Part shown: positions 6,719 to 29,158 of the stretch, in pieces
Layout of the letters: each line of letters begins with the position of its first letter
Numbering within the stretch: position 1 is the first letter of the stretch
From: Auanema rhodensis
Taxonomy: Eukaryota > Animalia > Nematoda
Length of the DNA stretch: 64,000 nucleotides
Assembly: GCA_964057225.1 (NCBI GenBank)
Contig: OZ059896.1
Location: 13,454,001 to 13,518,000, forward strand
Reading direction: 5' to 3'
Program-made: the position numbers and the translations under genes
The notes under the pieces: generated by a model
What the model was told of the DNA's origin: nothing
The model's input: the letters and a program-made list of their open reading frames with translations, nothing else
The model's database searches: none

Positions 6719-7474
6719 CTGCAAAACAATCAAATATGATACAATATATCATGAGAATCTTCAATATAGATAGAAAGTGGTTAGAAATGGAAAAGAACGC
6801 TACTTCATCAACCATAATTCAAATCTGTAGCTTAAAATTAGAATATTTTTCTTGCTAAAAAATATTGTACGTAATTCGTGTATTACGACTTTTGAATTTT
6901 TTTTCGGGATAGTTTCGTGAAACAAACTTTTTTTGAATCAGAAACTTGACCCAAACCATGAATTAAAGCAAAATAATTTACTAATATATCTATTACGATT
7001 TTTTTATTGTGATTTATGAAACTACGAAACATTACCCAAACTGTTGTAAATAGTTTATGTAATTCTTCAAATTTTCTTTGTAATTTTTCTATAATATTTA
7101 ATTATTTAAATTTATACAGCGTATATAGTAATATGAGTTATGAATAATGTAAGATATCTGAAATTATTTGATATCTTTTCAGTTTTCAGTTTTCTTAGTG
7201 AAATTGAAATGTGCTTGTGTTTCTGTATGTTTATGAGTGTATAAATTACAGTATGCCGTGCGAGATGTCATAGAAATAGACTTTATTTTTGCCATAATAA
7301 CCGGATTTAAATAATCTGATTAAATCAGACAAGTATAGTACACAAAATTTCAGCAGATTTTTTCAAAAGAAAAGTTATAAAATAAAAAAGCTAAAAAAAA
7401 GATTTGATGACATTTTACATAGTATCACAAGTACAAAATATAAAACTATTCGTAAACAAATAGTTTTTTTTGAT

Positions 7475-10231
7475 TTATAAAAGACGTTGTCTTTCTACTA
7501 TTCTCATCAGTTCAACAAATGATTCATTTACATTATCATTTCGCTTTGATGAAACTTCCAGGAAAGGACAGTTTAGGAAACGCGACAGGGCTTGTCCTTC
7601 GTATGATTCTACTTTTCTCTTGCGCCAGTTATCTGCCTTTGATCCTACCAAGACAATAGGAATCTGTAAATATAAAAACTTAATATTAAATAAAGAAAAA
7701 CATAAAAATTTTTATAAAGAGAAAGAATCAAATAATACTTACATTAGGAGCTCTGCGTTCAGTAATAGCGTTGTAAATATCACGGATTGCGAAGAAAGAC
7801 TCTCTATCGGTAATGGAATAAACCAAAATGAAACCATCAGCTGATTCAATATCATAATCGCTGTTCTGAAAAAAAAACAAATAAATATAGTTGGGTATAA
7901 GATTAAAACTTACATCACCATCAATAATATCAATCATACATGTGTTATTGATATCATCATCTCCGCCCTTATGTCCTAATATGTCAGTAAACAGAATTTC
8001 ATTTCCATATTGAACTCGGCGAAGTGAAGATTTTCCTACGGAATTACTTCCCATCACGGCAATTTTGCAGTCGCGAATGGAGAAAGAACGTTCTTCATCA
8101 GTGTCATAATCACTGAAGTTTCTGAAATGGCTATGGTAAAAAATATTCTCCAACATTAACAAATTTACATTTTCTTTTCCTCTTCTTCCTCTCTGTAAGC
8201 CGGATTAATGTAAGTTGTTTGTTTAGAAGTTTTCAACGAGTTCAAGAAGTATTTCAATTCAAGATTAGGAACTGGAGGAGTCTGTAAAAGTAATTGTAAA
8301 TAATAATTTACTAATACATTTTAAAAAAAAATTTCATTTTCATTTATTGTAAAACTTACAGATTTAGCGCCTTCTCCACAAACAATGCATCTTGGTGATC
8401 GATAAATAATTGGCTTTTCAGTAGGCTTGGATCTACAAAAATATATAAATTAGTATCAGTTTCTTGAAATAATTTTATAGAATGCACAACCGATTGTAAT
8501 AAATTTTAAACTAAAAATAAAAAAGGATGGGCGCATTCTAATATGGAAGTGAGCTTTCATTTCATGATATTTCAACTTACTGTGAAGTATTACGATCCTG
8601 AAGTACATGGCAGCTGCTAATTCCCATTCTTATCTTGTTTCTCCGAGATTTGAATGGAGCTTGTTGAACAAGTAGTGATTGGATGCATTGATAGCATAAT
8701 GAATGCCCACACTGAAGTGTCATTGGCTGAAAACATAATTATTTAGTTATTAATATTATTAATATAAAAATTTAGGAGTGCAAAAGCAAATATTTCTTTA
8801 ATGTATTACGTAATGAGTAAGGTTCTCTAATTCTTAAAACTAGGAAGACAAATGAATAGCCTACTACTTGCCATACATCCTTCTTTGGGTAACGAAGTTT
8901 ACTAAGGTTGTTGCGAGGGGAAGAGCTGGGTAAGTGATGACGCAAGATGAGTAGCGCAATTAACACTAATAAATGGAAGGAATCAGGAAAAAACAAAAGA
9001 AATTTGAGTTGTACAGCACAATATTACAGAAATACATTCAATATAATTCTATTTTATGATTATTAAAAATGAGTTATGTATGTAATTTGAGATGAATTAT
9101 TATGTGTGGAAGATATAAAGAAAAAAACTTCGTAAAACTTTTTTTGTAATCTATGTTATTCTTCTTTTTTTCTGAGAAGATATATGATATATAAGATGTA
9201 ATATTACTCCAAAAAGAGTATTTTTTTTTGTCACAACTAATCTCAAGTGGGTGTCATTGAAACCTGTCGATAGGCTGGATAACAAAAAAATTAGGTAAGA
9301 GGCTCAGAGGTTATGTGAGTTCTTAACGGAGGTCATGGCAAGCATGCATATATAGTGTCGTTCAAGTGCTAAAACTCGAAGTACGCTAAATCAGTAGATA
9401 TAAAGGATTATCCAGACAGTAAGAAGGTAAAGTGGAAGTAGAATTAAGGAATTAAATTTTACAAGTGTTATTCTTTCTTGAGTGAGATAAATAAAATAAA
9501 GAAATCTTAGTTAAAGATAACATAAATCCTCTCATTATGTCTATTTTGAATGTCTTGACAGGAAAACATGCTGAGTGGGTTAGGTTTGAGCGACCAAATT
9601 TGTAACTGTCAAGATTTGATTTGATGGAGCATGAGATACATAATATGTTGAGAGAAGAAAGCTAGGTGAAGGTTATTCTTCTAACTATATACGCATATAG
9701 TAAATGGGTGAAAACAATATGATGAGGATGATGGGAACAGCCGTAATTATAGAGATGAACGGAAGCACGTCGTAGCTGACGTACAATTTTCAGTTGCGTA
9801 ATCATGACCGGTTATCCCGAGGCCATCCCAATATTCTAGTCTTCTGGTCATCTCACTACATAATTTAGATTCGGCTCTTAGCTCTAATGTACAGTTGGCT
9901 ATAAAGCTTGACTAATAGATCATCTGGCTATTACTACTAATAAGATAAATCCAAACGATTAAATGAATGGATTAATGTAAATAAGCACAAGAAGATTTAC
10001 AAAACATAATTTAAAAAATAGAAGGAAAATAAGTTAATTAAAAAATAATTATTAAATAAAATTAGAAAATCAACAAACCTCTTCAAATAGTTTTTGACAA
10101 TGTGGACAAATTCCTGGAGCTGTACGAGGTACAGTTGAGACAACATCTTCGTCCGAAGATGAAGCAATAGAGCACGTACCATAGTCAGAGTGACAGGAGA
10201 GCTGAGAGCTTGGAGAAGCACAGGATGGCAT
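7475..10231 (-). CDS. RING-HC (C3HC4) zinc finger fused to an atypical Ras-family small GTPase domain, about 334 aa
   Basis: Seven phase-compatible exons: 10079-10231, 8581-8726, 8360-8432, 8169-8281, 7914-8121, 7743-7865, 7475-7663. RING: CPHC-x11-CGHSLCYQC-x49-CIVC. GTPase: GSNSVGKS, DGFILVYSITDRESF, IPIVLVGSKAD, FLEVSSK. Confidence 0.8.
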
Positions 10232-11540
10232 TCTGCAAGATTAATATACAAAATAGAATAAACACAACGATATAATAGTAAAATACATAGAGACGGTACG
10301 AAAAAATATTTTACGTATGAGTTGAGCTCGCTCATTACGTTGACCAGGGCTGAGATGATGAGGTTACTGCCGGAGTAGGAGGGTGTTGTTCAAAGGGGCG
10401 TTTGGGATAGGATGGTAAGGGGGCGGAGCTTAAGTAATAAACATATCAGGGAGAAAGAAAGAAAATATAAAGTTTAACTATTAAAATGGAATATATATGA
10501 AGAAGTATTTGAAATGAATAAAGAAGGTATTATGAGTAATACAAGTAATGAGACTAGACAGAATGATCTTGTTCAGAATTTAAAATGTTGTTTGAAATAC
10601 TACCATGTAACTGGGAATGCATTTGTATCCCATGACCTAAGATTTTATTGAACTTGAACATGTCCAGACTGTAGAGTTCAAATATCATTGTGGCCTACAG
10701 CGTTAAAACAGCACCAATCTTGTACAAGCATGAACAAAAACAAGAACACTTGTTAACACTTGAGCTTAAAAATTAAGTTCTTGAATGTTGCAGATGATAT
10801 TGTTCGCTAATTTAATGCTTTTTTTGACTTTTGCCTGTCCGAACAGCTTAGTCGTTTAATGTGTTTCTTCTTCAAGAGGATAAAACTAAGTGGTATAGCA
10901 GGAAGAAAGATAAAGATTGTAAGCCTAACGAGAGAGGAAGAAGAAGATTAAGAGGGAGAGAGGTTGAAAGGAAGGATTAGTACTTATAGGGGACAGGATT
11001 TGTCAAATAGATACCGCACTTAGCAAATAGAAAAATTGATGAGACAAGTAGTTGAGGTGAGACTACCGTAACTTTTAAAAAATTGTAACAAACTCTAAAC
11101 TACATCTTAATAACATGAAATCTGTTTGGTTAATCAAAGAAAAATTGATTTTTTGGTCAAATGAGCAAGGATCAGGATGAGACGTATGTAGTTATTGGCA
11201 AGGATTTTCTATAACTCGAATGCTTAGTGAACAGACGAGTGCGAAGCCAATGGCAACTATTCAAGTTGAAAGTAATTAAGGAGTGAAGGTGTCTATTGAA
11301 GTATCTATATGGCCCATTACATACAAGGATCATTAAATGAAATGAAGTTTCAAATGATAATTCCCCTTAATTATTTTGAAAGAAACGAAGAACAATTGGA
11401 ATATTTGTGTCGGTATTCTTTTCATATTATTTGATTTGGACTTGATTTGGAAGACATTTCAAGATAAATTGCAACTTTAGGAATTTAAAAATCTTTTAAT
11501 TACTTTCATTGTAAATGCTTAAAGGGAATTAAGAGGAAGA

Positions 11541-11543
<3 letters not shown>

Positions 11544-11588
<45 letters not shown>
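11544..11588. repeat. (GA)n microsatellite
   Basis: Perfect dinucleotide run. Confidence 0.95.
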
Positions 11589-11592
<4 letters not shown>

Positions 11593-12833
11593 TTATAAAT
11601 TTTTGCTGGTGTTGGGCAGATGGTTCAAGTTAACCTTAATTAGTGCTAACAGCAAAATATACACCTACACCTTATGAGGTGGAAATCCTAGAATGAATGC
11701 CAATAGACAAGATAAACAGACTGAAATCAGATATACATAAATATAATTATTAAATAAACACGAAATATGTGTTAAGTCATGTGTGATTATGGGATTTAAC
11801 AGTTTTCTACGTTGGTTTAGGCTATTGGCAACAAATGAAATTTGCTCATCTGTCATAGGCTAGAAAAATAAAACTTTTATAACATGGAATGTAATATATT
11901 ATAATAACTTGAGGTATTAATTATATGTTCATGAACATATCTGGTTGCATTAAAATCTGTTTTATGAGTCAAATGAGCAAAATTTATAGAATTAATGATC
12001 AAACATCACTCTTTTAATGAACAAGTTCGAGCCAAAGAAAATAATTTTTTGGTTAAAACATTCAAAAAATTTGAGAAGAAGACTTAAAGAGTTCGACAAT
12101 CAGTCCGTTTTTCAACTATTTTTTCTTTTCTTTTCAAAATACAAAAGCGAGACTTTAAAATGGTTGTCACAATGATATAAAAATGAAAAAACGACAAATT
12201 GTCTTCCCGAAAAAAATAAAAAAAAAGAAAAGGGAAGAGATGAGATATAACGAGAGGATTTGGTGTAATCGGAGTAAAACATCAAAATAACGCTTTTTTG
12301 TCTTTAAAGACGAAAAAATGAAGAAGAGAATGAACTCTTATCTTGTCTCATCTTTAATCTACGTTAAGGATGACTTTCAAATACCTACTTTTTGGACATA
12401 AGATTTCATATAAATTAACGGCACGCGACAATACTCAGGACAAGAAAATATAAAATCTTTGTACTTGATTAAATTTATAGTTTTTACATGATGCAAATGA
12501 ATTTGAACTCTATTACGAGCATATTTGTACTTTTAGGGTGAAAGAGAGTAAGATAGAGAGAATAGCGCGAGTATGAAGATATATGAATGACAGCATGAAG
12601 GACAGAAAAAGAGAAACTTAAAATTTCAAATTATATAAATGCTAGATTTGAAATATAAATTGTATATAATTTAAAGAAAACGAATAACTTAGTCAAGTTA
12701 AATTGGAAGGAAGTTTTAGAAGTTTTTAAAAATGCTTCACGTTATAATATTGAATCTAATGAAAATATTGGATGAAAACAACTTTTTATCATTCAATTTT
12801 CTTATCTTTTATTTTTTTTAATAAGAAAAGTGA

Positions 12834-13117
12834 ATGAGAACGACAAAAGTAAATGAGTCAGATTATTGTACATGTTATAAATTTCAGGCTGATAATATCT
12901 TAACGATGTTAGAACAGATTGAAAGATTAAATAAAAATGCTATTGGCAGGTAATCTGTTTATGTTAATGTTTTTCTTAGATTTGATTATCATCCAATTTT
13001 AGTATTCAATTTCTCAAACTAACAACTTCTGGTGCACATTCGTTATCTGTCAGCCATAAATCAGAAGATGGCGTCAACTTTCACGTTGTTCCGTCAAATT
13101 CTCAGCAGTTGTGTTGA
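12834..13117 (+). CDS. Candidate 3-exon small protein (about 63 aa) or spliced lncRNA
   Basis: Exons 12834-12848, 12888-12949 and 13003-13117 join in frame (MRTTK/ADNILTMLEQIERLNKNAIG/SIQFLK...QQLC-stop). Strong TTTCAG acceptor, CAG/GTAATC donor and AATAAA at 13138. No recognisable homology. Confidence 0.25.
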
Positions 13118-13475
13118 ACAGGTCTCTCAGAAGATTGAATAAAGAACGATGAACAAAGTAACAGAAGGAGCCGAAGCGCTGTTTGATGAGAAAGCTGGCT
13201 AGAACGGTTTCAAAGCAAAAGATGAACGACAGTTTAAACGAGTATCACTGTCATCTGTGCTATAGTAGGTGTTGGGCCCAAGGTGAGATGAGACAGATTT
13301 CATCCAAAGTATTCAAATTGTGAATCTGAATACAATGACTTATATAGATTCCAGATCTCTTGAATATATAATGAGAAGATGGGAAAGGTGTGAACAACGA
13401 GAAATGTTTTGATGACAGGCCGATCAGCACAACCAGCGATCTGGGACTAAAAGACAATGGAAAGTGAAATAAGAT

Positions 13476-13478
<3 letters not shown>

Positions 13479-13532
<54 letters not shown>
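13479..13532. repeat. (AT)n microsatellite
   Basis: Perfect dinucleotide run. Confidence 0.95.
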
Positions 13533-13540
<8 letters not shown>

Positions 13541-16500
13541 AAAAAGAGAAGGATAGTTAGAATATAAATTATACTGTAATTAGGTAGTTTTGATAATCAG
13601 ATAAAGAAAGACTTGGTAAGAAAGTGAGAAGGATTATGCTTAAGTAGACTTATCTAAGAAATCACAGAGGATAAACGTTTCAAAGAAGAAATATATACGA
13701 TATATACGAAAGATAGAAGAGATATTAGAAGAGAGAGTTGTAGATTACTAAGAGAAAAGATGAGGACAAAGTTTTGTATAAAGATATCAAGTTTGATACG
13801 ATAAGGTGAGAAAACACCTGTTCTTTTGCTGCGAAAGCTTATGCCAACGTGAAACAGATGTGAAAATACGTTAGAAAATTAATGTAAATCAGAAAAAGAT
13901 TGAAAGAGAAAGAGAAAGAGATAGGGTGAGAGAGAAGTGAATACATAGGAAGAACATAACATCGGATATGGAATGTTAAGGTGTGAAAATCACGCGACTG
14001 GGTCATGTCCATCTGTATCTGAGATTTAGTTAACTTCAGGGCTTATGATCATGTTTGTATATGTGAACAGGTGGTATGAATGTATTTACTAACTATATGT
14101 ATAGTAAATTAGTTTTTTTTGAAGAAGAAAAGAAATAATCTAATTACTATGGAGTTGTCATTTGAATGAAAGAAAGTTCGAGGTCATGTGTTTAGATTTA
14201 TAGAAAAAGGAAGAGAGCAACAAGAGATGAATTAACTATATGGTATTTATTATATTGAACGCATATAGTTAAAAGAAAATATTATTTTGATTGAAAGAAA
14301 TGTTTATGAATATTATTGTTGCTTTCAAAGGACTTTTTGAAATTGTCAGAAAAATGAAAAGAGGACGGACAGGACAGATGAATTGAAAAACATTTTGATA
14401 TTTTGGATGACAACATCGTCTTTTCTTAAGCAATCTTCAATTTCTATTCAACACTATATAGAATATTTTATTAAAAAAAGCGGTTATTCCTTTTGAAAAT
14501 AAAATAAAAGCTATTGTACAAACAATTTCTTTTTCTTTTTAGGTAAAAGTGGTATGGTTTATGTGGAGTGTGAAGTATGTGTCAGATCATCTTCAGTAGT
14601 TGAAGTACACAATGTAGTCGGCATTCATTCGAAGAAGAAGATCCGATAAAGTCACAAGTCAGTCAGAAAATAATCAAAAAACAGAAGCAATTTTGAATAA
14701 AAGGATTTGCGAAGTGTAAATCAGTTAAATAAACAATTTGTCGGATATGATAAAACAAAAATTGTAAGCCTTTTAAGTGCTTTCTATTCACTGTTACATA
14801 TAGAGCATATTAAGTGTGAGAGAGAAAAAATAAAAGAAAGAGATTGCCAAATAATTTTCTTTGTTTAAATTTTATCTGACAAATGAGATTAAATCATATA
14901 TTTATAATTTACTATCTATTATAATATATAATTTATACGATAAAGCGGTTAATTGAAAGAAATGTTAACAGAGATCTGACTTTAGACAGGCGTGACCTGA
15001 ATCATATTCATTTCAAAAAAAACAAAAAGTGTCTTATTACCAGAAAACTTGTCAAAAATTTTTAATAGAAATATGATATACAATCATAAAGATTTGAAGG
15101 GAAACTTCAAAAAAAACACCTGTTATTGATAATATTAAAGTTTTATCATCAAAATGTTTAGAAGACGTTGAAGTATGAAAAAATCAAAAGTTCAATATTT
15201 AGATAATAGAAATCATTCAAAACATAAGGATTACTCAATATAAACAGTCTAATTAGTCTGATGGTTACTTCAGAAGCCTTGGGTTATACCGGCGGAATGA
15301 CCACCGCATGACAATGATTGACATTTCCGTGCTAAACCTAAAGTACGATGAACAAGTCATCTAGGTCGAAAGAAAATAAATTCAAGAGGATATATCTAAT
15401 TTGGCTGGAAGGTGAAATAAAAGGGAAACACCTTTATGAGAGCCTGGAGATATTTAACGTCAAAATAGGCTGACAAGACAGACATTATAGTTTGACAACG
15501 CACAAATCCTACTAGACAACGAGTTCAGTATATCAACATGTCTTCGAGAGTAAAGAGAAGTAAGAGAAGAGAGGTAAATGATATAGATATGAGTCTAAAG
15601 CTAATAAAGAATGAAGAAAGATCAATATATAATAAGAAATAAGTAAGAGATTTGTAGTATTAAGAGAGAAATATTTAGAGTTTGATCAGTATAGTAATGG
15701 TATATGCTATATGTAAGATAATGTAAATGATCTTCATTAAACAATGTGCTCTTCAAATGACCCGTTAATCTATTTATTCAATAGATTAGGTTAAGTTAGT
15801 TATAATGAGCTAATTTTATAAATAATATAGTTTGTAATATGAATCTATTAGGGAAAATATAAGTAGAATAAGTAGGATGATTTACCATAGAAGGTAATGA
15901 TGACGATGAGATGGAAGTGAGACAACTCTTGTTTACTAGTAGTAGTAAGTGATTACGTCATATATACAAGATATTAAGGTAAATAAGATAGAAATCTTGA
16001 ATTATTCATTTAGTATATATTAGATATCGTTTAGTTATATCAAATATAATTATGAAATATAAGTAATAAAATTTAAGTTATGAGGTCATGCTCATAGCTA
16101 AAGGTTTCATTTTTCAAGTTATGAAATATGAAAGGCAACTATTTCCTATTAACTATTCGATTATACACAATACAATGTAGTAGGAAGGAAATTCTTTTGT
16201 TTTACAATGTTCAAACAAACCGCTACACGTGGAGCTTGATCATGCTCTTTAGCCAGAGGGAAATGAAACATCTCGGCATGGGCTAGCTCAAAACAGCTTG
16301 ATATGTGTTACAGGCTAGATTGCCAGTGGTTAAAGTTGATTAACAACAATAGTATATAGGAAGAATGGAGCCGAAAAGAAAATAAAAACAATAGAAAATC
16401 TTCTGATATGTATTTGTTAGCTTTCCATTAGGAAATTACAATATAATAAAGGTTATTGAGCACACGTGCTAACTATTGTCTTTGAATTTATTTAATAAAT

Positions 16501-17274
16501 ACCGATAATTTATAAATTTGATGAAGGGTTTTACTATTTATTATATATTAATTATATTTAAAACCTGTATATATAGTTTTAGGTAGATATTAGACAGATA
16601 TCATACATACATCTCTAGATATTAGTCCCGACTTAAGAAGATTTCAAGATAAGGTCAGATTTTTGAAATCAAATAACATATCCGCTCAGATGAAATTATG
16701 CGATAAGGATGTAGTTGGACGTGTTTTGAAGCAAGATACATCTGGCCATTCACACCTCACATCGACCTATGTTTACTACATGATTTCTTTGAAAACTCCC
16801 GACTTTAACTTACATATAGCATCATCATCATAAATCAGTTGTCGTCGGTTTATTTAGAAAAGTAAAAGAAGTATCTTTGATAATAAAATATTAAAAGCAG
16901 GTGTTAACTTATATATAGTATATATGTATTTGTAATATATATGTATGTAATTATGTCTTTGATTATATGTTAAATGAGGGAAAATAAACTTAAAAGTACT
17001 GTAAGTGAGTTTTATTCAAAAATTGACGATTTTTTTGATTTGTGATGTACTAAGATACTTTACCCCAAAAATCATAGCATTTATGGTATTAGTTAAAGGA
17101 TTAAATGATTTTAAAAGTTTAATAGACTAATTAGTAAAGAAATAAATGCTATAAGGATGAAACGAACTAATTATCTTATTAAAACTTAAGAATACTTTCT
17201 AATTAAAACAAGTATCACTTATACTATGCCAATGGGTAATATTGAGAGATTGATGTTTATACTTATATATAGAA

Positions 17275-17301
17275 ATATATATATATATATATATATATAT
17301 A
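17275..17301. repeat. (AT)n microsatellite
   Basis: Dinucleotide run. Confidence 0.9.
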
Positions 17302-17359
17302 CGTATTTTTATATTTAAAATATTAAATTTATATTATAAATATATAAATATAAATAATT

Positions 17360-17999
17360 TTATTCAACTTTCACTATAAGTATATGCATATTAAGAGATA
17401 TATCATTTATAGCACAAAATGTTGGTAGAATTGAAACTGTATCACCAGCATATCTTCAAAAAAAAAAGAATTTTATAAATAAAAATATAAATTATACCCA
17501 TTTACACGATGAAAGTTTGATACATTTATCAACCATTTCCCTGTATGTTGTTTGAAATATGGCATCAATATTTCCTTAATTATACATATAAATTAAGCTA
17601 ATTAAAACAAACAAAAGCAGTAGTTCTGTGAACGGCCCTTACCTCAAGATATTGCTGTAGCTCATCAACATTATTACGAATTGCGTCATTGGCTAATGCT
17701 TGTTCGACAGTCGTGCGAAGATATGAATTCTGGCAAAACCATACTGAAACAGAAAGTTTTTGGAAAATTTCTTCTCAAAATATAACAACTTATTGATTCA
17801 AAAATTTTTTATACAATGTATAATGTAATAGAAAATGAGTAAACCTTTTGGATCTGAATCATTTTGATGTTCAATTGGTACGGCTGTCACAAATAACACA
17901 AAACCAAAACTTAATATCCAATATAATCTATAAATATGAAAATAAAGTTTATAATTTAATAATTAAAATACAAAATTAAGAGAATATTACATACCTCAT
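17360..17999 (-). CDS. Small secreted protein, probable ground-like (hedgehog-related) domain; absent from the ORF track
   Basis: Five exons give MRLYWILSFGFVLFVTA (signal peptide)...WFCQNSYLRTTVEQAL...KWLINVSNF...TFCAINDISLNMHILIVKVE-stop. The C-x-N-x-x-L and late FC pattern resembles ground-like domains. Confidence 0.65.
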
Positions 18000-18696
18000 A
18001 TTAAAAAAATCGATAAGGATTGATTGTATAGATATTGTTATAGTCCTCTTATCAATATTCTTCCAAATTCAATAGTTTCAAAGATAACAATAGTTAAAAT
18101 ATAATTTTTCTTTATTTTAATTATTTCAACAAAAAAAAAGGAAAAAGAAAGATTTTAATTAGAAATCCAAAGTATCCAATTTAGTTTTAAAAACAAAAAT
18201 AATTAATACATCTCCCTCAAATAAATATACATAAATATGTAAAATGTTGAAGTTTTAAAATAATATTTAATTTTGAAAATATACAAAAAAATGTTTATTT
18301 TTATTATATAAACTAATAAAAATAATATTAATATATATATAATAATCCAAAACAAATTATGTTAATGCATAATCAGTATATATTTGGGATAGAATTAAGA
18401 TTATTCTATTTGGAATCTTGTTCATCTCCCCCACCCATTATTGCTATTTCTCTTTTAATTTGGATGAAGAAAATTAAAATTAACGATAAAGTAAATAGAA
18501 AAGAAGGATAATATGAGGATGATAAGCTTTTCTGAAGACATAATATCCATTTGTATTTGGAAGATTTTTGTTCGGACACACTGCTTTTCAATATCTTCAA
18601 CATGATGGTCACATTCGTATTCAAACCATGAACGCTTCACCCCTTTTTCATTTTTTTAAAGCATAAATCAAGTTATAAACTTTTATTTCAGAATTC

Positions 18697-21600
18697 ATGA
18701 GGGTTTACCTTTTTCAATTCTTCTCCTTGGTTATATTAGTGTCAGCTCAAGAAGATACAACTTCTTGGCCAGATGCTACAACGAATAGTTTCTTTTCAAC
18801 AACTGATATCGTTGATGCTTCTGGAGCAACATTTCTTTCATCAGATACAAATTCTTCAGGTGGAATCTTTAATGCTCAAGGTAATTACTTGTTCTATCTT
18901 AAAAATTGTTATTCATCCCTCATCTCCTTTAGGAAAAATCCGAATCAAAATTGGTCACATTGGAGCATTAAATGCATTGAGGAATGATGTTGTCATTTTG
19001 AATATATCACATAAATCTTTACGTGCAGAAGGACTATTTGATGATGATTTTGATATTGAGTAAGGTTTTTAGTTATGACTTAAGTTTCATGTATATCATA
19101 TGATAGAATTGTGTCGCAGAATGGTTGTGGTGAATCATATGAAGGAGTTGCAGTTGCAGCTGATATGTATCATCTACAGAAAGTTAAAGCTTTTATTGGA
19201 CCATACTGTAATGCAGGTATTTTTATGGATTTCATACTTTTGTTCAATCTTAAGATTATTTAACTGTTAGTTTTGTATATAAACAAATAAATTGTTCAGA
19301 AATGGATGCTGTAGCCAGAATGGCAGCTTTTTGGAACCTGCCTATCATCGGATATATGGCGTCGTCTAATGCTTTAGCAGATAAGAAGGCATATCCGACT
19401 TTAGCTAGAATATCGGTTTCCATTATAGAAATGAAAAATAATTTAAATTTGAAATTCTTTAGATGAGATCAACTAATTCTATTGCTGAAGCTACAGCAGC
19501 TCTTTTAAAACATTATGGATGGAATAAAGTAATATAGAATTATAATAATGATAATATGACAATCTTGTTTTCAGGTTGCTATAGTTACAAATACAGGAAC
19601 CTTAGCTTATGATCGTACTTCAGCATTCGAAGAAATATTTCATGCTAAAAAGATTACTGTAGTTAAAAAGGTTTCAAATTCAAAAAAGAATAAGATTTAA
19701 GAAATACTAATTTCTCAGATTATGTTTGATGAATTTGCTGATGCAAAGATAATGGTAAATTCAGGATTATTGAATGAATTAAAGAATACAGCTCGAGGTA
19801 TGATTCTTATAAAAACAAAAAAATTTTAAACAAATTTTTTGTTTTATAGTTATCATCTGTCTATTTTCAAATACACGTGAAATTTCACGTGAATTTTTAA
19901 CAGCAGCTAATAGTCAAGGAATGCAAGTTAATGAATATGCATATATACTTCCATGGTTACAAGTATTTGAAAACTTTTAAAATTTTATTAAAAAAAAACA
20001 ATTTTGATTAGGATGGACTTAAAGATGTAACACCATGGATTGGTACAGAAGGTGAAATGTTACAAAAAGTAAAAGATCAATATGCTAACGCAATTATTGT
20101 ATGTATAAGAATAATATTTTATATTCTCAATTTAACAAATTTCTTAATAGATTTTATTTATTTTTAGATTGATGATGTTAATAGTTTTGATAACACAATC
20201 ACAACACCATTCCTTGATAGAATCAAAGATGCTGGACTAACTGCGAAGGACGTTGACATAGTAAAATAGTATTAGATATATAAAATAATTTTTATAAACT
20301 ATTTTAGGCCAATATTTATGGTTATCTTTATTTATTTGATGCTTTAAAACTTTATGCTCTGGCTGCACGAAAAGTACTCAATGAAACTGGAAGACCTGAA
20401 AATCTTTTAAATGGAAAATTAATATGGAATAATATGAGAAGAATGACTTTTCAAGGTAATAAAACAAATATATGAGGGATTGTGAATAATTGAATAAATT
20501 ACAGGAATGTTGGCAGCTTCGGGAATCGCTTCTGGAATTGTTACTATGGATGATCGTTCTGAGCGAGCACCATTATACAGGGGATTTTTCGTAACACCTG
20601 GATCGGATACAGTAAGAAATTATATGAAATTTAAATTTAAAATATAATATTTTTAGGTTATGTCAATGGTTAATATGGAACCAACACTTATAGATAAATG
20701 TGATGGAGTCGAAAATAAGACAGGATGTTATGATATTGTAAATTAAACTTTAAAATTATTATATTATATGATATAATAATAATAATATAGATTGTAACTG
20801 ATCTGATGAGAGATTTCTGGCCTTCAGTTGATCGTCGAATGCCTAAGGATGAACCAGAATGCGGATTCCGAAATGAAAAATGCGATTATACCTTACCTAT
20901 TGTAGGAGGTGCATTAGTAGTATTAGCTATATTATTAGCTGCTGGAGCATTTTTAGCCCATCGAATATTGTTAGTTATTCGAAAATTATAATTAAGAAAT
21001 TATAAATGAAATAATTAGGGAGAAAAGAACTTTGAACAAATTGCCGTTCCGTATTTACCGTGATGATATTCAACTAATTGATGAAGAACAATTGAAGAGT
21101 ATGGTTGGTTTTATTATAAGAATTATATTGTTTTATATTATAATATTATAGTTATCACTTGGATCTACACGTACAAAACTCAGTAATATGAATTATGGAT
21201 CACGTAATCATGCAATTGTTGGAACAAATACTCATGCTATATATCATAAGTATTGAAATGATGATTATAAAAAATAAAAAAAAATAATTTCTAGATATAC
21301 ACAACGACGTCCAATTACATTTAATCGAGTAGATAAACAACTACTTGTTCTAGTATGATTATGATAATTCATATATATCTAAAGATATTTGTTACAGATG
21401 AAACAAGCTATCCATGATAATATAAATCCATTTTTGGGAATATGTTTTAATGAAAAAGAAGAAGTTCTTCTATTATGGAAATTCTGTTCACGGTTAATAT
21501 TTTAGATTATAGAATATCTGGATTTTATATTTTCAGTGGAACATTACAAGATATAATTTATAATGATAATATTGCTTTGGATAATAAATTTCATGGAGCA

Positions 21601-23695
21601 TTTATAAAAGATATTTTGGCTGGATTAGAATATTTACATTCGTCTCAAATTGGATATCATGGATCTTTAACACCATGGTCTTGTTTAATTGATCGTAATT
21701 GGATGGTTAAATTAACTGATTATGGTAATATTATAACAGAAATTTATCTAAACAATCTCTTATCTCATAGGTATTGCTGATCCACTTGAACGATGGGAGA
21801 AACAACAAGCTATATCACGTGATTTACTAAAAGGAGAAGATGATCGATCACAAGCTACTCAATCAACAAGTATAGAATACTTACAAAGATTATAATTAAT
21901 AATCATATTCAGGTCAATTATATGAAGCTCCGGAAATGTTGAAAAATCGAGAAAAGAATAGATCTCGAAGAGTTGATCAAGAATGGATGAAACAGACTAT
22001 GGTTTGAATCTTTAAATACTTTTCATTACAAAAATTTTCATTAAGGTTCGTAAAGCTATGGGAGATATTTATGCTTTTGGATTGATCATGTATGAAATTA
22101 TATTCCGTGCATTGCCCTTCCCTGAAGGAACAGATACCATGCGTACGGATAATTCTTCAAACGATTTATAAAAAAATTATATTTAGAGCTTGTGGAACAA
22201 ATCAAAGATGGAAGTAAAATAGTTAAACCATCAATCATGTCAAACAAAGTATAAAAAAGTTCAAAGAAATAATTTAATTATCAGATCGCTTTCAGGTTTT
22301 GAATATGGATTTAACTAATCTTATCAGTGATTGTTGGAATAGCACACCCGAAATGAGACCTTCATTAAGACGAATTAAGCTTAATGTTGAAAGCTATCTG
22401 AAAGTGTGAGTAGAAGGAATAATATTGATTTCTTATGAAGAAATGTTTAGAAAAGGTTCTTTGGTTGATCAAATGATGAGAATGATGGAGCAATACGCTA
22501 ATAATCTTGAGAAATTGGTACAAGAAAGAACTGGTATGCTTGAAGAAGCTAATGTTCGTGCGGATAGGCTGTTGGCTCAATTACTACCATCGTAATCTTA
22601 TCAAGAATTAGAATATATTCATCTTTTTGATTTCTAGATATGTTGCAAACGAATTGAAAAATGGACGACCTGTTCCTCCTAAGATGCATAGCTCTGCTAC
22701 AATTCTATTCAGGTATTGAAAAAAGAAAGAAGAGAAAAGAAACAAAAATTAAATTAAAGTGATATTGTTGGCTTTGCGGATATGTGTCGTGATGCAAGTC
22801 CCCTTGAAGTTGTAGCAGTGTTGAATGGAGTCTTTGATGGTTTTGATCAGTTTATCGCAAGAAGACAAGCTTACAAAGTTTAATAAGAGATATTTTAAAT
22901 TAAATTTTTCGATTTCTTAGGTTGAAACTATTGGTGATGCTTATATGGTTGTCTCTGGAGTACCTGAAGAAAATGGTCACCGTCACATAAATGAAATTGC
23001 TTGTATTGCTATTGATGTTCACAAAGTAAGACAAAAACAATTATATTTTAATTATTATCCTTTAAAATTCCAGTTCTTGAAAGATTTCGAAGTACCTCAT
23101 CGAAAAGATATACGCATCTCATGTCGTCTTGGATTCCATTCAGGTCCGGTGGCTGCTGCAGTTGTTGGATTAAACGCCCCACGCTTCTGTCTATTTGGAG
23201 ATACAGTATAATAAACGTGTAATTTCCAAATTATACAATTATAATAATTGAAGGTTAATATGTCATCTCGTATGGAAAGTAATGGAGAACCTGGCAAAAC
23301 ACAAATCAGTGAATTTTCAAATAATCTCCTACTTAAGGAATATCCTGAATATAGTACAGAGTTCCGTGGAGAAATACCTATTAAGGTTCAAAATTAAAAT
23401 AAATTATTATGTTATAAATCAATTTAAGGGCAAAGGTATGTGTAAGACATATTGGCTAATTGGAACACATGTTGAGAATAACTTGAACTATTGTGCTCCA
23501 ACACAGAAGGTAAAATATAAATACTATATATATATATACAAAAAACAAGTTTAATTTCAGGATAAGAGTAACTTCAGTAATCTTCTTGGATCCAATCAAT
23601 CTCAATCTGCTATGCCTCAGTTCAATATGCCGAAAGCTCCAAGTAGCAACCCATCAAACGCCCCTAGCATAAATCAGAGTATGTTATCTCGTTGA
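18697..23695 (+). CDS. gcy-8: Receptor guanylyl cyclase, AFD thermosensory clade, gcy-8-like
   Basis: Signal peptide, S/T-rich extension, [15 protein letters not shown]...[46 protein letters not shown] helix (about 20890-20960), kinase-homology domain ([23 protein letters not shown]) and cyclase domain ([32 protein letters not shown]). 31 introns. Confidence 0.8.
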
Positions 23696-27200: not shown

Positions 27201-29158
27201 TAATTGATCGTAATTGGATGGTTAAATTAACTGATTATGGTAATATTATAACAGAAATTTATCTAAACAATCTCTCATCTCATAGGTATTGCTGATCCAC
27301 TTGAACGATGGGAGAAACAAGGTGCTATCTCAATGGAAACATTGAAAGATGGAGAAGAAAAGAGTGGTTCAACCCAGAAAACAAGTAAATTCTAATTCTT
27401 ATCAACCTAAAATCAATTCAATATCTATGTTTTGTATTTGAGGTGTTCTCTATCAACCTCCTGAAGTCTTGAAAACTCAACAAAGCAACCGTGGACGACG
27501 TGTTGATCAAGTAAGTTACATTGTTTGCACACAGTGCAGGTGTACATCATGCATTGTGAATATCAGAGACGGGTTGGAACCCGAATTTATCCAAATATAC
27601 CAATTTAGAAATATCTAGGTTGGAATATTACTGATACACATGTATTTAAATGAGAATAGATTATAATCAAACCTCATTGTATTCCAAATTTTATTATAAC
27701 AGTATGAATATTAATAAGAAATTATCAGAAGCTTCATAGTCAACACTATATTCTTCAGTCATGGGTAAAGCAAACACAGGGTCGTCGTCAAGCAGGAGAC
27801 ATTTACTCCTTCGGTGTAGTTTTACATGAAATTTTGTTCAGAACTTTGCCATTCCCCGTCGGTACCGACATTCAAGGTAACCATTTATATTATAGAAATC
27901 AACATCTTAATTTGAATTGTCAGAATTGATTGATTATGTGAAAGATGGAGATAAAGTTTTTCGTCCATCTATTAAGGATAGAAACGAAATTCATCCGGAT
28001 ATGGTATCATTACTCTTGGATTGTTGGAATGAAAATCCTGATATTCGACCATCAATTCGAAGAGTTCGTTTGAATACAGATAGTTATCTGAAAGTGTGAG
28101 TAGGAGGAATAATATTGATTTCTTATGAAGAAATGTTTAGAAAAGGTTCTTTGGTTGATCAAATGATGAGAATGATGGAGCAATACGCTAATAATCTTGA
28201 GAAATTGGTACAAGAAAGAACTGGTATGCTTGAAGAAGCTAATGTTCGTGCGGATAAGCTATTATCTCAGCTCCTACCTAAGTGATTTTATACATTTATT
28301 TACTTAATAATATATGAAAACCATCAGATACGTAGCAAATGAGTTAAAACTTGGTCGCTCTGTTCCACCAAAAACATTCCAAACAGCTACTGTTATGTTC
28401 AGGTTCTGATCCAACATTTTCCTTAAAACATGGAATATCTTTTAGTGATATCGTTGGATTTACAACAATTTGTTCCTCATCCAGCCCATTAGAAGTTGTG
28501 AATATGTTAAACTCAATATATAGTAAATTTGATGATATCATAAATAAAAACATGGCATATAAGGTAATACTATGATGTTAGTTGTTTCACAGTAATACAA
28601 GAGTTCAGGTTGAAACAATTGGTGATGCTTATATGATTGTGTCCGGGATTCCAGAAGAAAACGGAAACAGACATATAATGCACATATGCGATACAGCTTT
28701 AGATCTTATGCAGGTATTGATGAACATTTTCTTCGAATTGAAATGCTAACTTTTAGATCCTGCAAACATATCAAATTCCACATCGACGAACTGAGCGCCT
28801 ACGTATTCGTCTAGGTATTCATAGTGGATGTGTTTCAGCAGGAGTTGTAGGCTTCTCAGCTCCACGCTATTGTCTATTTGGAGACACGGTACAGTACATA
28901 AAAGAGAGACAAACAAAGTAAATAATATGTCAGGTCAATATTGCGTCCCAAATGGAATCATCTGGTGAACCAGAAAAAATTCAACTGTCTGATGTTGCTA
29001 AGGTATTGCTTGATAGAGGATTCCCAGAGTTCCAATATGTTGAAAGAGGTCTAACCCAAATCAAGGTCTATAACCATCAAATTTGTCAATAAAACACAAT
29101 TTTTACACTTTAGGGCAAGGGGGAGATGACGACATATTGGTTACGTGGTAAAGCTTAA
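24273..29158 (+). CDS. gcy-23: Receptor guanylyl cyclase, AFD clade, gcy-23-like
   Basis: Short N-terminus [26 protein letters not shown]...[53 protein letters not shown] helix, kinase-homology and cyclase domains ([31 protein letters not shown]). The assignment within the gcy-8/18/23 clade is from memory. Confidence 0.7.

What the first reader, a model, noticed from the sequence alone, without database searches (positions are those of the whole stretch)
7475..10231. RING E3-ligase finger fused to a degenerate Ras-like GTPase with no CaaX
Seen: splicing seven phase-compatible exons gives a complete C3HC4 RING with an unusually long 49-aa insert before the last CxxC, an acidic linker and a Ras-type G domain. 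G1 is intact (GSNSVGKS), but G3 DxxG reads DGDN, switch I/II look shortened, G4 is SKAD, G5 is SSK, and the protein ends RQRLL with no prenylation motif. Known: the familiar RING plus small GTPase fusion is TRIM23, which carries an ARF domain; I do not recall a characterised RING-Ras protein. Inference: this may be a nucleotide-gated ubiquitin ligase or a ligase that uses a pseudo-GTPase to recruit Ras effectors or regulators. An internal MGISSC in the RING insert could also start a shorter, N-acylated, RING-less isoform. About 7 kb of largely gene-free DNA upstream suggests complex regulation.
Basis: partly seen in the sequence, partly recalled or inferred. Interest (0 to 1): 0.78.

Follow-up and report, generated by a model that had tools for sequence, protein, structure and literature searches.

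The report
Nematode RING ligase fused to Ras-like domain
This is a real, strongly conserved roundworm gene (the counterpart of the unstudied C. elegans gene T26C12.3) that joins a ubiquitin-ligase-type zinc finger to a Ras-like domain which keeps its nucleotide pocket but has lost its switch parts; nobody appears to have tested its function.

Summary
Seven minus-strand exons (10231-7475), all with GT..AG introns and matching phases, encode 334 aa: a C3HC4 RING with a 49-aa loop before the last CxxC, an acidic linker and a Ras-family G domain.

- **G domain:** G1 GSNSVGKS, G4 SKAD and G5 SSK are kept. DxxG reads DGDN, the switch I Thr and the catalytic Gln are absent, switch II is 7 residues short, and there is no CaaX.
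- **Family:** It is not an orphan. The closest protein is from Auanema sp. JU1783 (about 90% identical, same seven exons). The family is found in Rhabditida clades IV-V, and the C. elegans member is the uncharacterised T26C12.3, which also lies next to a gcy cyclase. I found no relative outside nematodes.
- **Transcripts:** RNA contigs from C. elegans and a strongylid carry RING and G domain in one frame.
- **Selection:** dN/dS is about 0.04.
- **Conservation pattern:** The invariant residues are the zinc ligands and the nucleotide-pocket motifs, not the switches.
- **Literature:** No held paper names T26C12.3.

Most likely it is a TRIM-like RING E3 with a non-switching, nucleotide-holding Ras fold as partner-binding module. 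This is inferred, not shown.

C. elegans isoform b starts at the homologous MGIS, but here an in-frame ATG precedes that codon.

The scan noted a similar RING-Ras locus 2.1 Mb away (s1-421827), which I did not check.

The parts
10079..10231 (-). Exon 1 (51 codons): Met start, Ser/Asp-rich N-terminus with the family motif SHSDYG, and the first zinc pair CPHC (10108-10097).
   Evidence: The motif is conserved in alignment A1. An acceptor-like TCTTGCAG lies one base before the ATG.
8727..10078 (-). Intron 1 (1352 nt), at the same position as the long first intron of C. elegans T26C12.3. It holds a block (9712-9850) that is 80% identical to the Auanema sp. JU1783 locus.
   Evidence: Synonymous sites between the two species are saturated, so the block is probably under constraint.
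8581..8726 (-). Exon 2: RING core CGHSLCYQC (8711-8685), the central helix, and the first 34 residues of the 49-aa loop with the conserved RMG(I/L/V)S motif. The MGISSC ATG is at 8627-8625. An earlier in-frame ATG is at 8723-8721.
   Evidence: Pfam RING models; G of RMG invariant, M in at least 90%; list of ATGs.
8360..8432 (-). Exon 3: the end of the loop and the last zinc pair CIVC (8389-8378).
   Evidence: Both Cys and the preceding Pro are invariant in the family.
8169..8281 (-). Exon 4: the PPVPNLELKYFL helix that follows the RING (as in TRIM RINGs), an NPAY motif (8206-8195) and the acidic linker.
   Evidence: P, N and L are invariant. The helix is modelled with pLDDT about 90 and superposes on the TRIM21 RING.
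7914..8121 (-). Exon 5: the rest of the linker, beta-1, the P-loop GSNSVGKS (8051-8028), a shortened switch I and beta-2/3, ending in DGD.
7743..7865 (-). Exon 6: N of 'DGDN', a switch II shortened by 7 residues, and GFILVYSITDRESF (beta-4/alpha-3).
   Evidence: Ras, 9.3e-5; 7-residue gap against Rap, Rheb and Di-Ras.
7475..7663 (-). Exon 7: PIVLVGSKAD (G4, 7642-7631), EVSSK (G5, 7552-7544), the C-terminal helix, and RQRLL followed by the stop. There is no CaaX.
   Evidence: (Ras, 1.1e-11). K, D, E and S are invariant.
10974..11064 (-). Conserved non-coding block about 0.75 kb upstream of the ATG (88% identical to Auanema sp. JU1783 over 92 bp). Candidate regulatory element or leader exon.
13023..13113 (-). 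Second conserved upstream block (87% over 92 bp).
15747..15788 (-). Third conserved upstream block (90% over 42 bp).

Best explanation
**What it is (well supported).** The gene is the orthologue, in an Auanema-like rhabditid nematode, of C. elegans T26C12.3. It belongs to a family found so far only in Rhabditida clades IV and V.

**The protein has three parts.**
1. A TRIM-type C3HC4 RING. Its loop between zinc ligands 6 and 7 is expanded to 46-60 disordered residues and carries a conserved R-x-R-M-G-[ILV]-S motif. A TRIM-like P-x-P-N-L-x-L helix follows the RING.
2. A disordered acidic linker.
3. A Ras-subfamily G domain. It keeps the nucleotide-holding elements: the P-loop GxxxxGK[ST], the acidic residue of G3, [STN]KxD and E-x-S-[AS]-[KR]. 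It has lost both gamma-phosphate sensors (switch I Thr, G3 Gly) and the catalytic Gln. Switch II is 7 residues short, switch I is short and variable, and there is no lipid anchor.

**How it most likely works (inferred).** The RING recruits a ubiquitin-charged E2. The G domain, permanently loaded with nucleotide and unable to act as a classical GTP/GDP spring, serves as the fixed partner- or substrate-binding module. This is the logic of RhoBTB (atypical Rho plus a Cul3 adaptor) and Rab40 (Rab plus a SOCS box), and more loosely of TRIM23.

**Possible second product.** A product lacking at least the first zinc pair may be made from an internal start, as annotated for C. elegans isoform b.

**My odds.** Real gene and T26C12.3 orthologue: about 0.95. 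G domain binds nucleotide but is not a conventional switch: about 0.6. RING is an active E3: about 0.55.
For: **Gene model.**, corroborated exon by exon by the JU1783 protein.

**Domains.**
- Pfam hits RING and Ras on single exons.
- On the full-length orthologues, Ras scores 1e-20 to 1e-24 and zf-C3HC4_4 down to 5.7e-9.

**Family and orthology.**
- The exhaustive HMMER search gave only 24 hits; those checked were nematode proteins or unnamed metagenome sequences.
- In the word and profile searches the E-value drops from 1e-39 for the last family member to 1e-26 for generic Rheb/Rap.
- The C. elegans member is T26C12.3, isoforms a and b.
- Its first intron sits at the same position, and a gcy cyclase is its neighbour.

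**Transcripts in relatives carry RING and G domain in one frame.**
- C. elegans Logan contig L002.
- Eight strongylid RNA contigs L003-L010.
- A 1322-nt contig with a 399-aa ORF, L011.

**Selection.** Against the JU1783 locus pS is 0.68 (saturated) and dN is 0.07, so dN/dS is about 0.04. Every exon behaves this way.

**Conservation pattern.**
- The invariant columns are the last CxxC, PxxNxxL, G188/G193/K194, K283/D285 and E310/S312. DxxG and the switch regions vary.

**Structure.**
- The AF2 G domain matches KRas/Rap at TMt about 0.84.
- The RING-only model matches the TRIM21 RING across both halves at TMt 0.78-0.81 and rmsd about 2 A, with the loop disordered.
- By PDB sequence search the G domain is nearest Di-Ras2, Rap1 and RERG, and the RING is nearest TRIM31/34/21 and RNF168.
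Against: - **No biochemistry exists.** Nucleotide binding, hydrolysis and E3 activity are all inferred.
- **E2-contact position.** The residue two after the first Cys, usually Ile/Leu/Val in active RINGs (my own knowledge), is His in nearly all members (CPHC).
- **No basic 'linchpin'.** The residue after the last Cys is G, S, C, Q, L or H rather than a basic residue. Both points fit a weak or partner-dependent E3.
- **Domain arrangement unresolved.** pTM of the full model is 0.48, so the model shows no RING to G-domain arrangement.
- **Unplaced RING plus Ras cluster.** An ESM-Atlas cluster of unknown taxa also combines RING and Ras (row 3). Its relation to this family is unknown, so 'nematode-only' is provisional.
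Confidence: 0.5

Rival explanations
1. A true nucleotide-gated ligase. The G domain still cycles between two nucleotide states by an unconventional mechanism (for example nucleotide-dependent dimerisation, or an Asp/Ser in switch I replacing Thr35). That state controls RING activity or RING dimerisation, as proposed for the ARF domain of TRIM23.
For: - The nucleotide pocket motifs are invariant across clades IV-V.
- An Asp aligns with Rap/Rheb Thr35 in most members.
- The RING has the TRIM-like C-terminal helix used for dimerisation in TRIM RINGs (the role of the helix is my own knowledge).
- Strong purifying selection acts on exons 5-7.
Against: - Neither canonical gamma-phosphate sensor is present, and the catalytic Gln is missing.
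- Switch II is 7 residues shorter, and the residues at the DxxG positions differ between genera (DGDN, DSNN, DGGD, DGMS, DDHR, DNND, ENPS). That is not what a conserved sensing mechanism would show.
- Switch I varies in length.
Confidence: 0.2
2. Not a ligase. The RING is a structural or protein-binding zinc module, or the silent partner of a heterodimeric RING. The protein would then be an atypical Ras-like adaptor with a zinc-finger extension.
For: - His occupies the usual hydrophobic E2-contact position (CPHC, in at least 90% of members).
- No basic linchpin follows the last Cys.
- A 46-60-aa loop interrupts the second zinc site.
- C. elegans annotates an isoform without the first six ligands, so the rest of the protein may work without a RING.
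Against: - All eight ligands and the spacing around them are invariant in the full-length members analysed.
- The predicted fold superposes on E2-bound TRIM21/TRIM25 RINGs.
- Pfam RING models score above their gathering cutoffs.
- Many active RINGs lack a linchpin (my own knowledge).
Confidence: 0.2
3. Gene-model artefact: two neighbouring genes (a small RING gene and a small GTPase gene) wrongly spliced together by the reader.
For: There are no reads from this genome. The linker is disordered and poorly conserved.
Against: - Single RNA contigs in C. elegans, a strongylid and a clade IV species hold both domains in one ORF.
- The same fusion is annotated in more than 15 species.
- All splice phases fit, and the last RING exon (exon 4) ends in a split codon completed by exon 5.
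- There is no stop and no start signal between the domains.
Confidence: 0.02

Closest known systems
C. elegans T26C12.3 (NP_001294278, UniProt U4PQV1; isoform b 238 aa) and its annotated orthologues in Auanema, strongylids, Pristionchus, Mesorhabditis, Panagrellus and Rhabditophanes
   Same: - Same domain order and the same conserved motifs: SHSDY, CPHC...CGHSLC..C, RMG[ILV]S, C-x2-C, PxPNLxL, P-loop, [ST]KxD, ExS.
- Same first-intron position and the same gcy neighbour.
- 38% identity with C. elegans and about 90% with Auanema sp. JU1783.
   Different: - Seven exons here against three coding exons in C. elegans.
- The gcy neighbour is divergent here and tandem in C. elegans.
- Auanema and strongylids have an NPAY motif and a more acidic linker, which Caenorhabditis lacks.
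- Auanema has an extra in-frame Met at the start of exon 2.
- None of these proteins has a reported function.
TRIM23 / ARD1 (RING, B-boxes, coiled coil, ARF domain)
   Same: An N-terminal TRIM-type RING and a C-terminal small-GTPase fold in one polypeptide. It is listed by the Atlas feature search at score 0.79.
   Different: - There are no Pfam B-box or Arf hits here; the coiled coil was not tested separately.
- The G domain is Ras-subfamily, nearest Di-Ras, Rap and RERG.
- The G domain here has lost its switch motifs.
RhoBTB proteins (atypical Rho domain plus BTB domains that assemble Cul3 ligases; PMC4931677) and Rab40 (Rab plus SOCS box; my own knowledge)
   Same: An atypical or non-cycling small-GTPase fold is physically coupled to a ubiquitin-ligase module. 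This is the best functional analogy.
   Different: The ligase module there is a cullin adaptor placed C-terminal to the GTPase. Here it is a RING itself, placed N-terminal. There is no sequence relationship beyond the G fold.
RGK (Gem/Rad/Rem), Di-Ras and RERG, which are Ras-subfamily members with atypical switch regions
   Same: - Ras-subfamily fold with a non-canonical G3, and for RERG no CaaX (own knowledge).
- Gem, Di-Ras2 and RERG are among the best PDB sequence matches, and Gem is also among the fold matches.
   Different: - Those are single-domain proteins, or carry only short extensions, and have no RING.
- Their switch II is full length.
- Sequence identity is only about 28-33%.

Membership tests
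C3HC4 RING finger (Pfam zf-C3HC4 / zf-C3HC4_4 / zf-RING_UBOX) | Eight zinc ligands in the order C-x2-C-x(9-39)-C-x(1-3)-H-x(2-3)-C-x2-C-x(4-48)-C-x2-C. | tested here: met
   The window reads C-x2-C-x11-C-x-H-x2-C-x2-C-x49-C-x2-C. The last spacer is one residue over the textbook range. All eight ligands are invariant in 17 full-length relatives.
C3HC4 RING finger (Pfam zf-C3HC4 / zf-C3HC4_4 / zf-RING_UBOX) | Profile score above the curated cutoff. | tested here: met
   - Exon 2 alone: zf-C3HC4 22.8 against 21, and zf-RING_UBOX 25.7 against 25.2.
- Orthologue P0001: zf-C3HC4_4 36.4 against 30.
C3HC4 RING finger (Pfam zf-C3HC4 / zf-C3HC4_4 / zf-RING_UBOX) | Cross-brace RING fold. | tested here: met
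   The AF2 model of P0001:32-148 superposes on the TRIM21 RING (6fga, 6s53) over both halves, with TMt 0.78-0.81 and rmsd about 2 A. This is a prediction on the ~90%-identical orthologue, not on the window protein itself.
C3HC4 RING finger (Pfam zf-C3HC4 / zf-C3HC4_4 / zf-RING_UBOX) | E2 binding and ubiquitin transfer (hydrophobic E2-contact residue, linchpin, activity). | tested here: inconclusive
   The contact position is His and there is no basic linchpin. Activity itself cannot be tested with these tools.
Ras-family small GTPase (Pfam PF00071) | Profile score above the curated cutoff, and a Ras fold. | tested here: met
   - Exon 7 scores 45.1 bits and exon 6 scores 22.5 bits against a cutoff of 21.6.
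- P0001 scores 83.3 bits.
- Foldseek matches KRas/Rap1 at TMt about 0.84.
Ras-family small GTPase (Pfam PF00071) | G1 P-loop GxxxxGK[ST]. | tested here: met
   GSNSVGKS. G, G and K are invariant in the family.
Ras-family small GTPase (Pfam PF00071) | G2 switch I Thr (Ras T35) and the effector loop. | tested here: not met
   The loop is shortened. HMMER deletes P34-T35, and MAFFT puts Asp at the Thr column. The region varies within the family.
Ras-family small GTPase (Pfam PF00071) | G3 DxxG followed by the catalytic Gln, and a full-length switch II. | tested here: not met
   The motif reads DGDN. Only the acidic first residue is conserved. There is a 7-residue deletion and no Gln.
Ras-family small GTPase (Pfam PF00071) | G4 [NT]KxD and G5 SAK. 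| tested here: met
   SKAD and SSK. K283, D285, E310 and S312 are invariant. The first position of G4 is S, T or N across the family.
Ras-family small GTPase (Pfam PF00071) | C-terminal CaaX or another prenylation signal. | tested here: not met
   The protein ends RQRLL. No family member has a CaaX, whereas the Rap and Rheb references in the same alignment do.
Ras-family small GTPase (Pfam PF00071) | GTP binding and hydrolysis. | not testable with these tools
   Needs recombinant protein.
TRIM23 / tripartite-motif family | B-box(es) and a coiled coil after the RING, with an ARF-type G domain. | tested here: not met
   There is no B-box or Arf Pfam hit on seven full-length family members. The G domain is nearest Di-Ras/Rap. 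The segment between RING and G domain is a roughly 30-residue disordered linker.
T26C12.3 orthologous group | Collinear full-length similarity, shared specific motifs, shared intron 1 position, shared neighbour. | tested here: met
pseudoGTPase (GTPase fold lacking catalytic motifs; PMC5593906) | A GTPase fold with one or more G motifs lost, so that hydrolysis and/or binding is abolished. | tested here: inconclusive
   By sequence, G2 and G3 are lost and G1, G4 and G5 are kept. Which class it falls in (nucleotide-binding or not) needs an assay.

The most novel reading that the evidence does not exclude
The locus may encode a two-isoform module that is conserved in rhabditid nematodes. The long form would be a TRIM-like RING E3 whose substrate receptor is a permanently nucleotide-loaded, switch-less Ras fold. 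The short form would come from an internal promoter in the long, partly conserved first intron. It would lack the first zinc pair or the whole RING core, and would begin at or near the invariant Met-Gly of the RING loop. That short form would compete for the same partners as a built-in antagonist, possibly N-acylated in some lineages. This would be a new way of wiring a Ras fold to ubiquitination, and it is directly testable in C. elegans.
Probability: 0.12. Interest if true: 0.65.

Novelty: new variant of a known kind. Interest (0 to 1): 0.42.

Why it matters
Small-GTPase folds coupled to ubiquitin-ligase modules (TRIM23, RhoBTB, Rab40) are few, and each has taught something about how nucleotide state or a dead switch directs ubiquitination. 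This family is a Ras-subfamily version with the RING itself attached.

- It is kept under strong purifying selection across free-living and parasitic rhabditids, including hookworms, Haemonchus and Strongyloides-like species.
- It has a C. elegans member that can be knocked out and tagged at once.
- The held literature does not name it.

The conservation pattern makes a clear prediction: a nucleotide-binding but non-switching module. The pocket is invariant while the switches are deleted and variable.

The gain is moderate. The architecture is already visible in public annotation, and no function is shown here.

Tried and rejected
1. **RNA evidence from this genome.** I substituted transcript contigs from relatives.
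2. **Joined spliced protein.** I used exon references, the stop-free read-through of intron 5 (window:7743-8120:-) and the database orthologue P0001.
3. **P0037 as evidence for a short isoform.** This is a 250-aa Logan protein starting at MGLSS. It was rejected because in all eight contigs the frame stays open upstream through the whole RING to an earlier Met, so the later start is the gene caller's choice.
4. **N-myristoylation of an MG-start isoform as the reason the Met-Gly is conserved.** This is weak. Position 6 fits the usual rule only in Auanema (Cys) and Panagrellus (Ser). It is V/M, Y, R or L elsewhere.
5. **Membership in TRIM23.** Rejected.
6. **Recruitment of Ras effectors.** Judged unlikely because the effector loop is absent.
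7. **Non-coding RNAs.** Rfam on the whole window at gathering thresholds found nothing. On 7300-18000 at E<=1 it gave only a sub-threshold snR8 match at 14761-14856. The conserved non-coding blocks are therefore not known RNA families.
8. **Literature.** 'T26C12.3' returned 0 papers, and generic RING/Ras/GTPase queries returned nothing relevant.
9. **Synteny downstream of the gene.** The C. elegans lectin, the unknown gene and the TPP-enzyme neighbours gave no hit in the window. Only the gcy neighbour is shared.
10. **Model coordinates.** They are not exposed, so zinc-site geometry and RING to G-domain contacts could not be measured.
Full report
**Observation**

Every intron starts GT and ends in a nematode-style acceptor. 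Intron lengths are 1352, 148, 78, 47, 48 and 79 nt. The two split codons are completed correctly, and the coding total is 1005 nt, giving 334 aa.

The translations show the following:
- CPHC, then x11, then C-G-H-S-L-C-Y-Q-C.
- A 49-residue spacer that contains KIRMGISSC, then CIVC.
- PPVPNLELKYFL, then NPAY and an acidic run.
- GSNSVGKS; IDIIDGD|N; GFILVYSITDRESF; PIVLVGSKAD; LEVSSKRN; and the end ...VERQRLL followed by a stop.

Pfam, run exon by exon by reference, calls RING on exon 2 (zf-C3HC4 and zf-RING_UBOX both over their cutoffs). It calls Ras on exon 6 (9.3e-5), on exon 7 (1.1e-11) and on the stop-free read-through of exons 5-6 (1.6e-6).

The full-length work below uses the database protein P0001.

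**What it is related to**

An exhaustive HMMER search of 1.84 billion representatives with the exon 5-6 piece found only 24 proteins at E<=1e-3. That is very few for a 'Ras' query, so this G domain is a distinct lineage.

The best hit is P0001, a 336-aa annotated protein of Auanema sp. JU1783. tblastn of P0001 on the window recovers all seven exons in order. The JU1783 locus (L012) is collinear with the window and has the same seven exons.

Word and profile searches with P0001 and with alignment A1 give a sharply bounded family:
- Strongylids: Necator, Ancylostoma, Haemonchus, Nippostrongylus, Trichostrongylus, Dictyocaulus, Cylicocyclus, Cooperia, Oesophagostomum, Teladorsagia, Angiostrongylus, Parelaphostrongylus.
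- Heterorhabditis, Pristionchus, Mesorhabditis and Caenorhabditis (C. elegans, japonica, angaria, auriculariae, sp. 36).
- Clade IV: Panagrellus, Rhabditophanes and an AT-rich RNA contig, P0066.

After the last family member (1e-39) the list falls to generic Rheb/Rap at 1e-26.

The C. elegans member is T26C12.3, labelled 'Uncharacterized protein'. Isoform a is 345 aa and isoform b is 238 aa. Three things support orthology:
- Its first intron splits the RING at the same place...FE(E/Q)|P(M/I)(T/S)LQCGH.
- A receptor guanylate cyclase is its neighbour.
- The C-terminal exon of that cyclase hits the window at 28757-29152 and 23074-23385. There the cyclases are on the plus strand, so they are divergent from this gene rather than tandem.

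**Is it expressed as one protein, and is it functional?**

In relatives, single intron-less RNA contigs hold both domains in one ORF:
- C. elegans L002.
- Eight strongylid contigs, L003-L010. Their frame runs from MLRPSPTPISRMSHSDY through the RING into the G domain.
- L011.

Against the JU1783 locus, synonymous sites are saturated (pS 0.68) while dN is 0.07. That gives dN/dS of about 0.04, and no exon is relaxed. The 'degenerate' G domain is therefore under strong constraint, not decaying.

**Anatomy from the family alignment**

Invariant or nearly invariant features:
- All eight zinc ligands.
- P and L around CGHSLC.
- The Gly (and in at least 90% of members the Met) of R-x-R-M-G-[ILV]-S inside the loop.
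- The Pro before the last CxxC.
- P-x-x-N-x-x-L after it.
- The P-loop G/G/K.
- Q and N of 'VQYGN'.
- GF...Y of beta-4 and the Pro of 'PIVLVG'.
- K and D of G4, and E-x-S of G5.

Not conserved:
- The four G3 positions (DGDN, DSNN, DANN, DGGD, DGMS, DDHR, DNND, ETGD, ENPS). Only the first, acidic residue persists.
- Switch I, which is short, of variable length and has no conserved Thr.
- The linker.

Against Rap2, Rheb, Rap1b and Di-Ras2, switch II carries a 7-residue deletion and there is no Gln61 equivalent. The reference GTPases in the same alignment end in CaaX, and no family member does.

Established GTPase mechanism holds that Thr35 and Gly60 are the gamma-phosphate sensors of the loaded spring, and that Gln61 positions the catalytic water. 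On that basis the pattern says the nucleotide pocket is kept while the classical switch and hydrolysis machinery are gone. This is an inference from conservation, not a measurement.

**Structure predictions**

- *Full length, P0001 with A1.* Confident regions are the RING core (40-75), the CxxC plus helix (106-145) and the G domain (177-336). The loop (76-105) and the linker (146-176) are disordered. pTM is 0.48, so no inter-domain arrangement can be read.
- *G domain.* It matches KRas, HRas, Rap1, RIT1 and Gem at TMt about 0.8.
- *RING segment alone.* It superposes on E2-bound TRIM21, and also on TRIM25, TRIM69, RNF8 and RAD18 RINGs. The match covers both halves and the C-terminal helix, with the loop as a gap (TMt 0.78-0.81, rmsd about 2 A).
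- *Sequence level.* The first RING half is nearest TRIM31/34/21/5 and RNF168.

So the 49-residue spacer is best read as a disordered insertion in loop 2 of an otherwise TRIM-like RING. There is no B-box or Arf signal, so this is not a TRIM23 relative.

**Mechanism**

Most likely (about 0.5) this is a RING E3 whose partner-binding module is a permanently nucleotide-loaded, non-switching Ras fold. The closest analogies are RhoBTB (atypical Rho plus Cul3-adaptor BTB domains, PMC4931677) and Rab40. pseudoGTPase domains used as interaction modules are documented elsewhere (PMC5593906, PMC12490416).

Two rivals stay open, at about 0.2 each:
- A real but unconventional nucleotide gate on the ligase.
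- A RING that is not catalytic. The usual hydrophobic E2-contact position is His in CPHC, and no basic linchpin follows the last Cys. The roles of these positions are from my own knowledge.

**The short isoform**

- C. elegans isoform b (P0053) starts exactly at the homologous MGIS.
- In C. elegans that ATG is the first ATG in exon 2 in any frame, behind a strong TTTTTTTTCAG acceptor. A transcript beginning at exon 2 would therefore start there.
- In this window and in JU1783, exon 2 has earlier ATGs. One is in frame at its second codon (M52, 8723-8721). The equivalent transcript would give a product that keeps CGHSLC..C but lacks CPHC, not an MG-start protein.
- The position-6 residue favoured for N-myristoylation is present only in Auanema and Panagrellus.
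- The near-invariance of Met-Gly is real but unexplained.
- A Logan protein that seemed to support the short form (P0037) is a start-codon choice on full-length transcripts.

**Regulatory surroundings**

I found no convincing gene between 10232 and about 18.4 kb. In C. elegans about 9.6 kb separates T26C12.3 from the cyclase.

Against saturated synonymous sites, four non-coding blocks stay 80-90% identical between the two Auanema genomes:
- 10974-11064.
- 13023-13113.
- 15747-15788.
- 9712-9850, inside intron 1.

None of the four matches an Rfam family. The strongylid transcripts use at least three different leaders spliced to a common exon. 'Complex regulation' is plausible but unproven.

**Novelty and verdict**

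The gene and its two-domain annotation are already in public databases, so the object itself is not new. What is missing is any study: no held paper names T26C12.3.

As a kind of system it is a new variant of the known coupling between GTPase folds and E3 modules. It has a clear, testable prediction and a model-organism orthologue.

The lineage restriction to Rhabditida IV-V is provisional. I could not examine that locus.

Interest is moderate, at 0.42.

Noticed in passing
window 10974-11064, 13023-13113, 15747-15788; intron 1 block 9712-9850: Non-coding blocks that are 80-90% identical to the Auanema sp. JU1783 locus, although synonymous sites of the gene are saturated. The intron block holds a conserved TATAAT-like stretch. 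They are candidate enhancers, leader exons or an internal promoter. There is no Rfam match.
   Followed up: partly
L003-L010 (strongylid RNA contigs): At least three different 5' leader sequences are joined to one common exon upstream of the RING-Ras ORF. L003 also carries a 458-aa sulfatase-like ORF upstream on the same contig, which could mean a polycistronic precursor or an assembly chimera.
   Followed up: no
window 8195-8206 (NPAY in exon 4): An NPxY motif (ENPAYRE) in the linker is conserved in Auanema, strongylids and Mesorhabditis but absent in Caenorhabditis. It could be a PTB-domain or endocytic docking site.
   Followed up: no
window 10079-10231 (N-terminus): A conserved Ser/Asp-rich N-terminal motif, S-R-x-S-H-S-D-Y-x-S/C...SSSDDD, precedes the RING in nearly all family members. 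It looks like an acidic phospho-cluster, and its role is unknown.
   Followed up: no
window 18697-18987 (+): A 96-aa ORF with a signal-peptide-like start ([18 protein letters not shown]...) sits in the otherwise empty upstream region. The JU1783 locus has a called 119-aa gene at the collinear place (67% DNA identity to window 17345-17754).
   Followed up: no
window 10000-16000: Strong strand asymmetry in gene-poor DNA: GC skew +0.25 to +0.28 and AT skew +0.12 to +0.16 on the plus strand. There is also an (AG)22 run at 11544-11588 and an (AT)27 run at 13479-13533.
   Followed up: no
window 52027-54031 (-): Two long ORFs encode a vesicular acetylcholine transporter (unc-17-like, starting MGFNVPIINRDSDLL...). 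The cholinergic locus therefore lies in this window.
   Followed up: no
window 35377-36498 (+): A 373-aa ORF that is extremely rich in Pro and Gln, with (PQ)n runs.
   Followed up: no
window 23074-23385 and 28757-29152 (+): Two gcy-type cyclase C-terminal exons, 42% and 48% identical to the C. elegans cyclase next to T26C12.3. The neighbourhood is conserved but the orientation relative to the RING-Ras gene is inverted.
   Followed up: partly
It could be a paralogue or the TRIM23/arc-1 gene.
   Followed up: no
ESM Atlas (row 3): A 56-member cluster of about 389-aa proteins with RING_UBOX, Ras and Roc domains and no recorded taxa. It may be Strongyloides-like members of this family or an independent RING-Ras fusion.
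   Followed up: no
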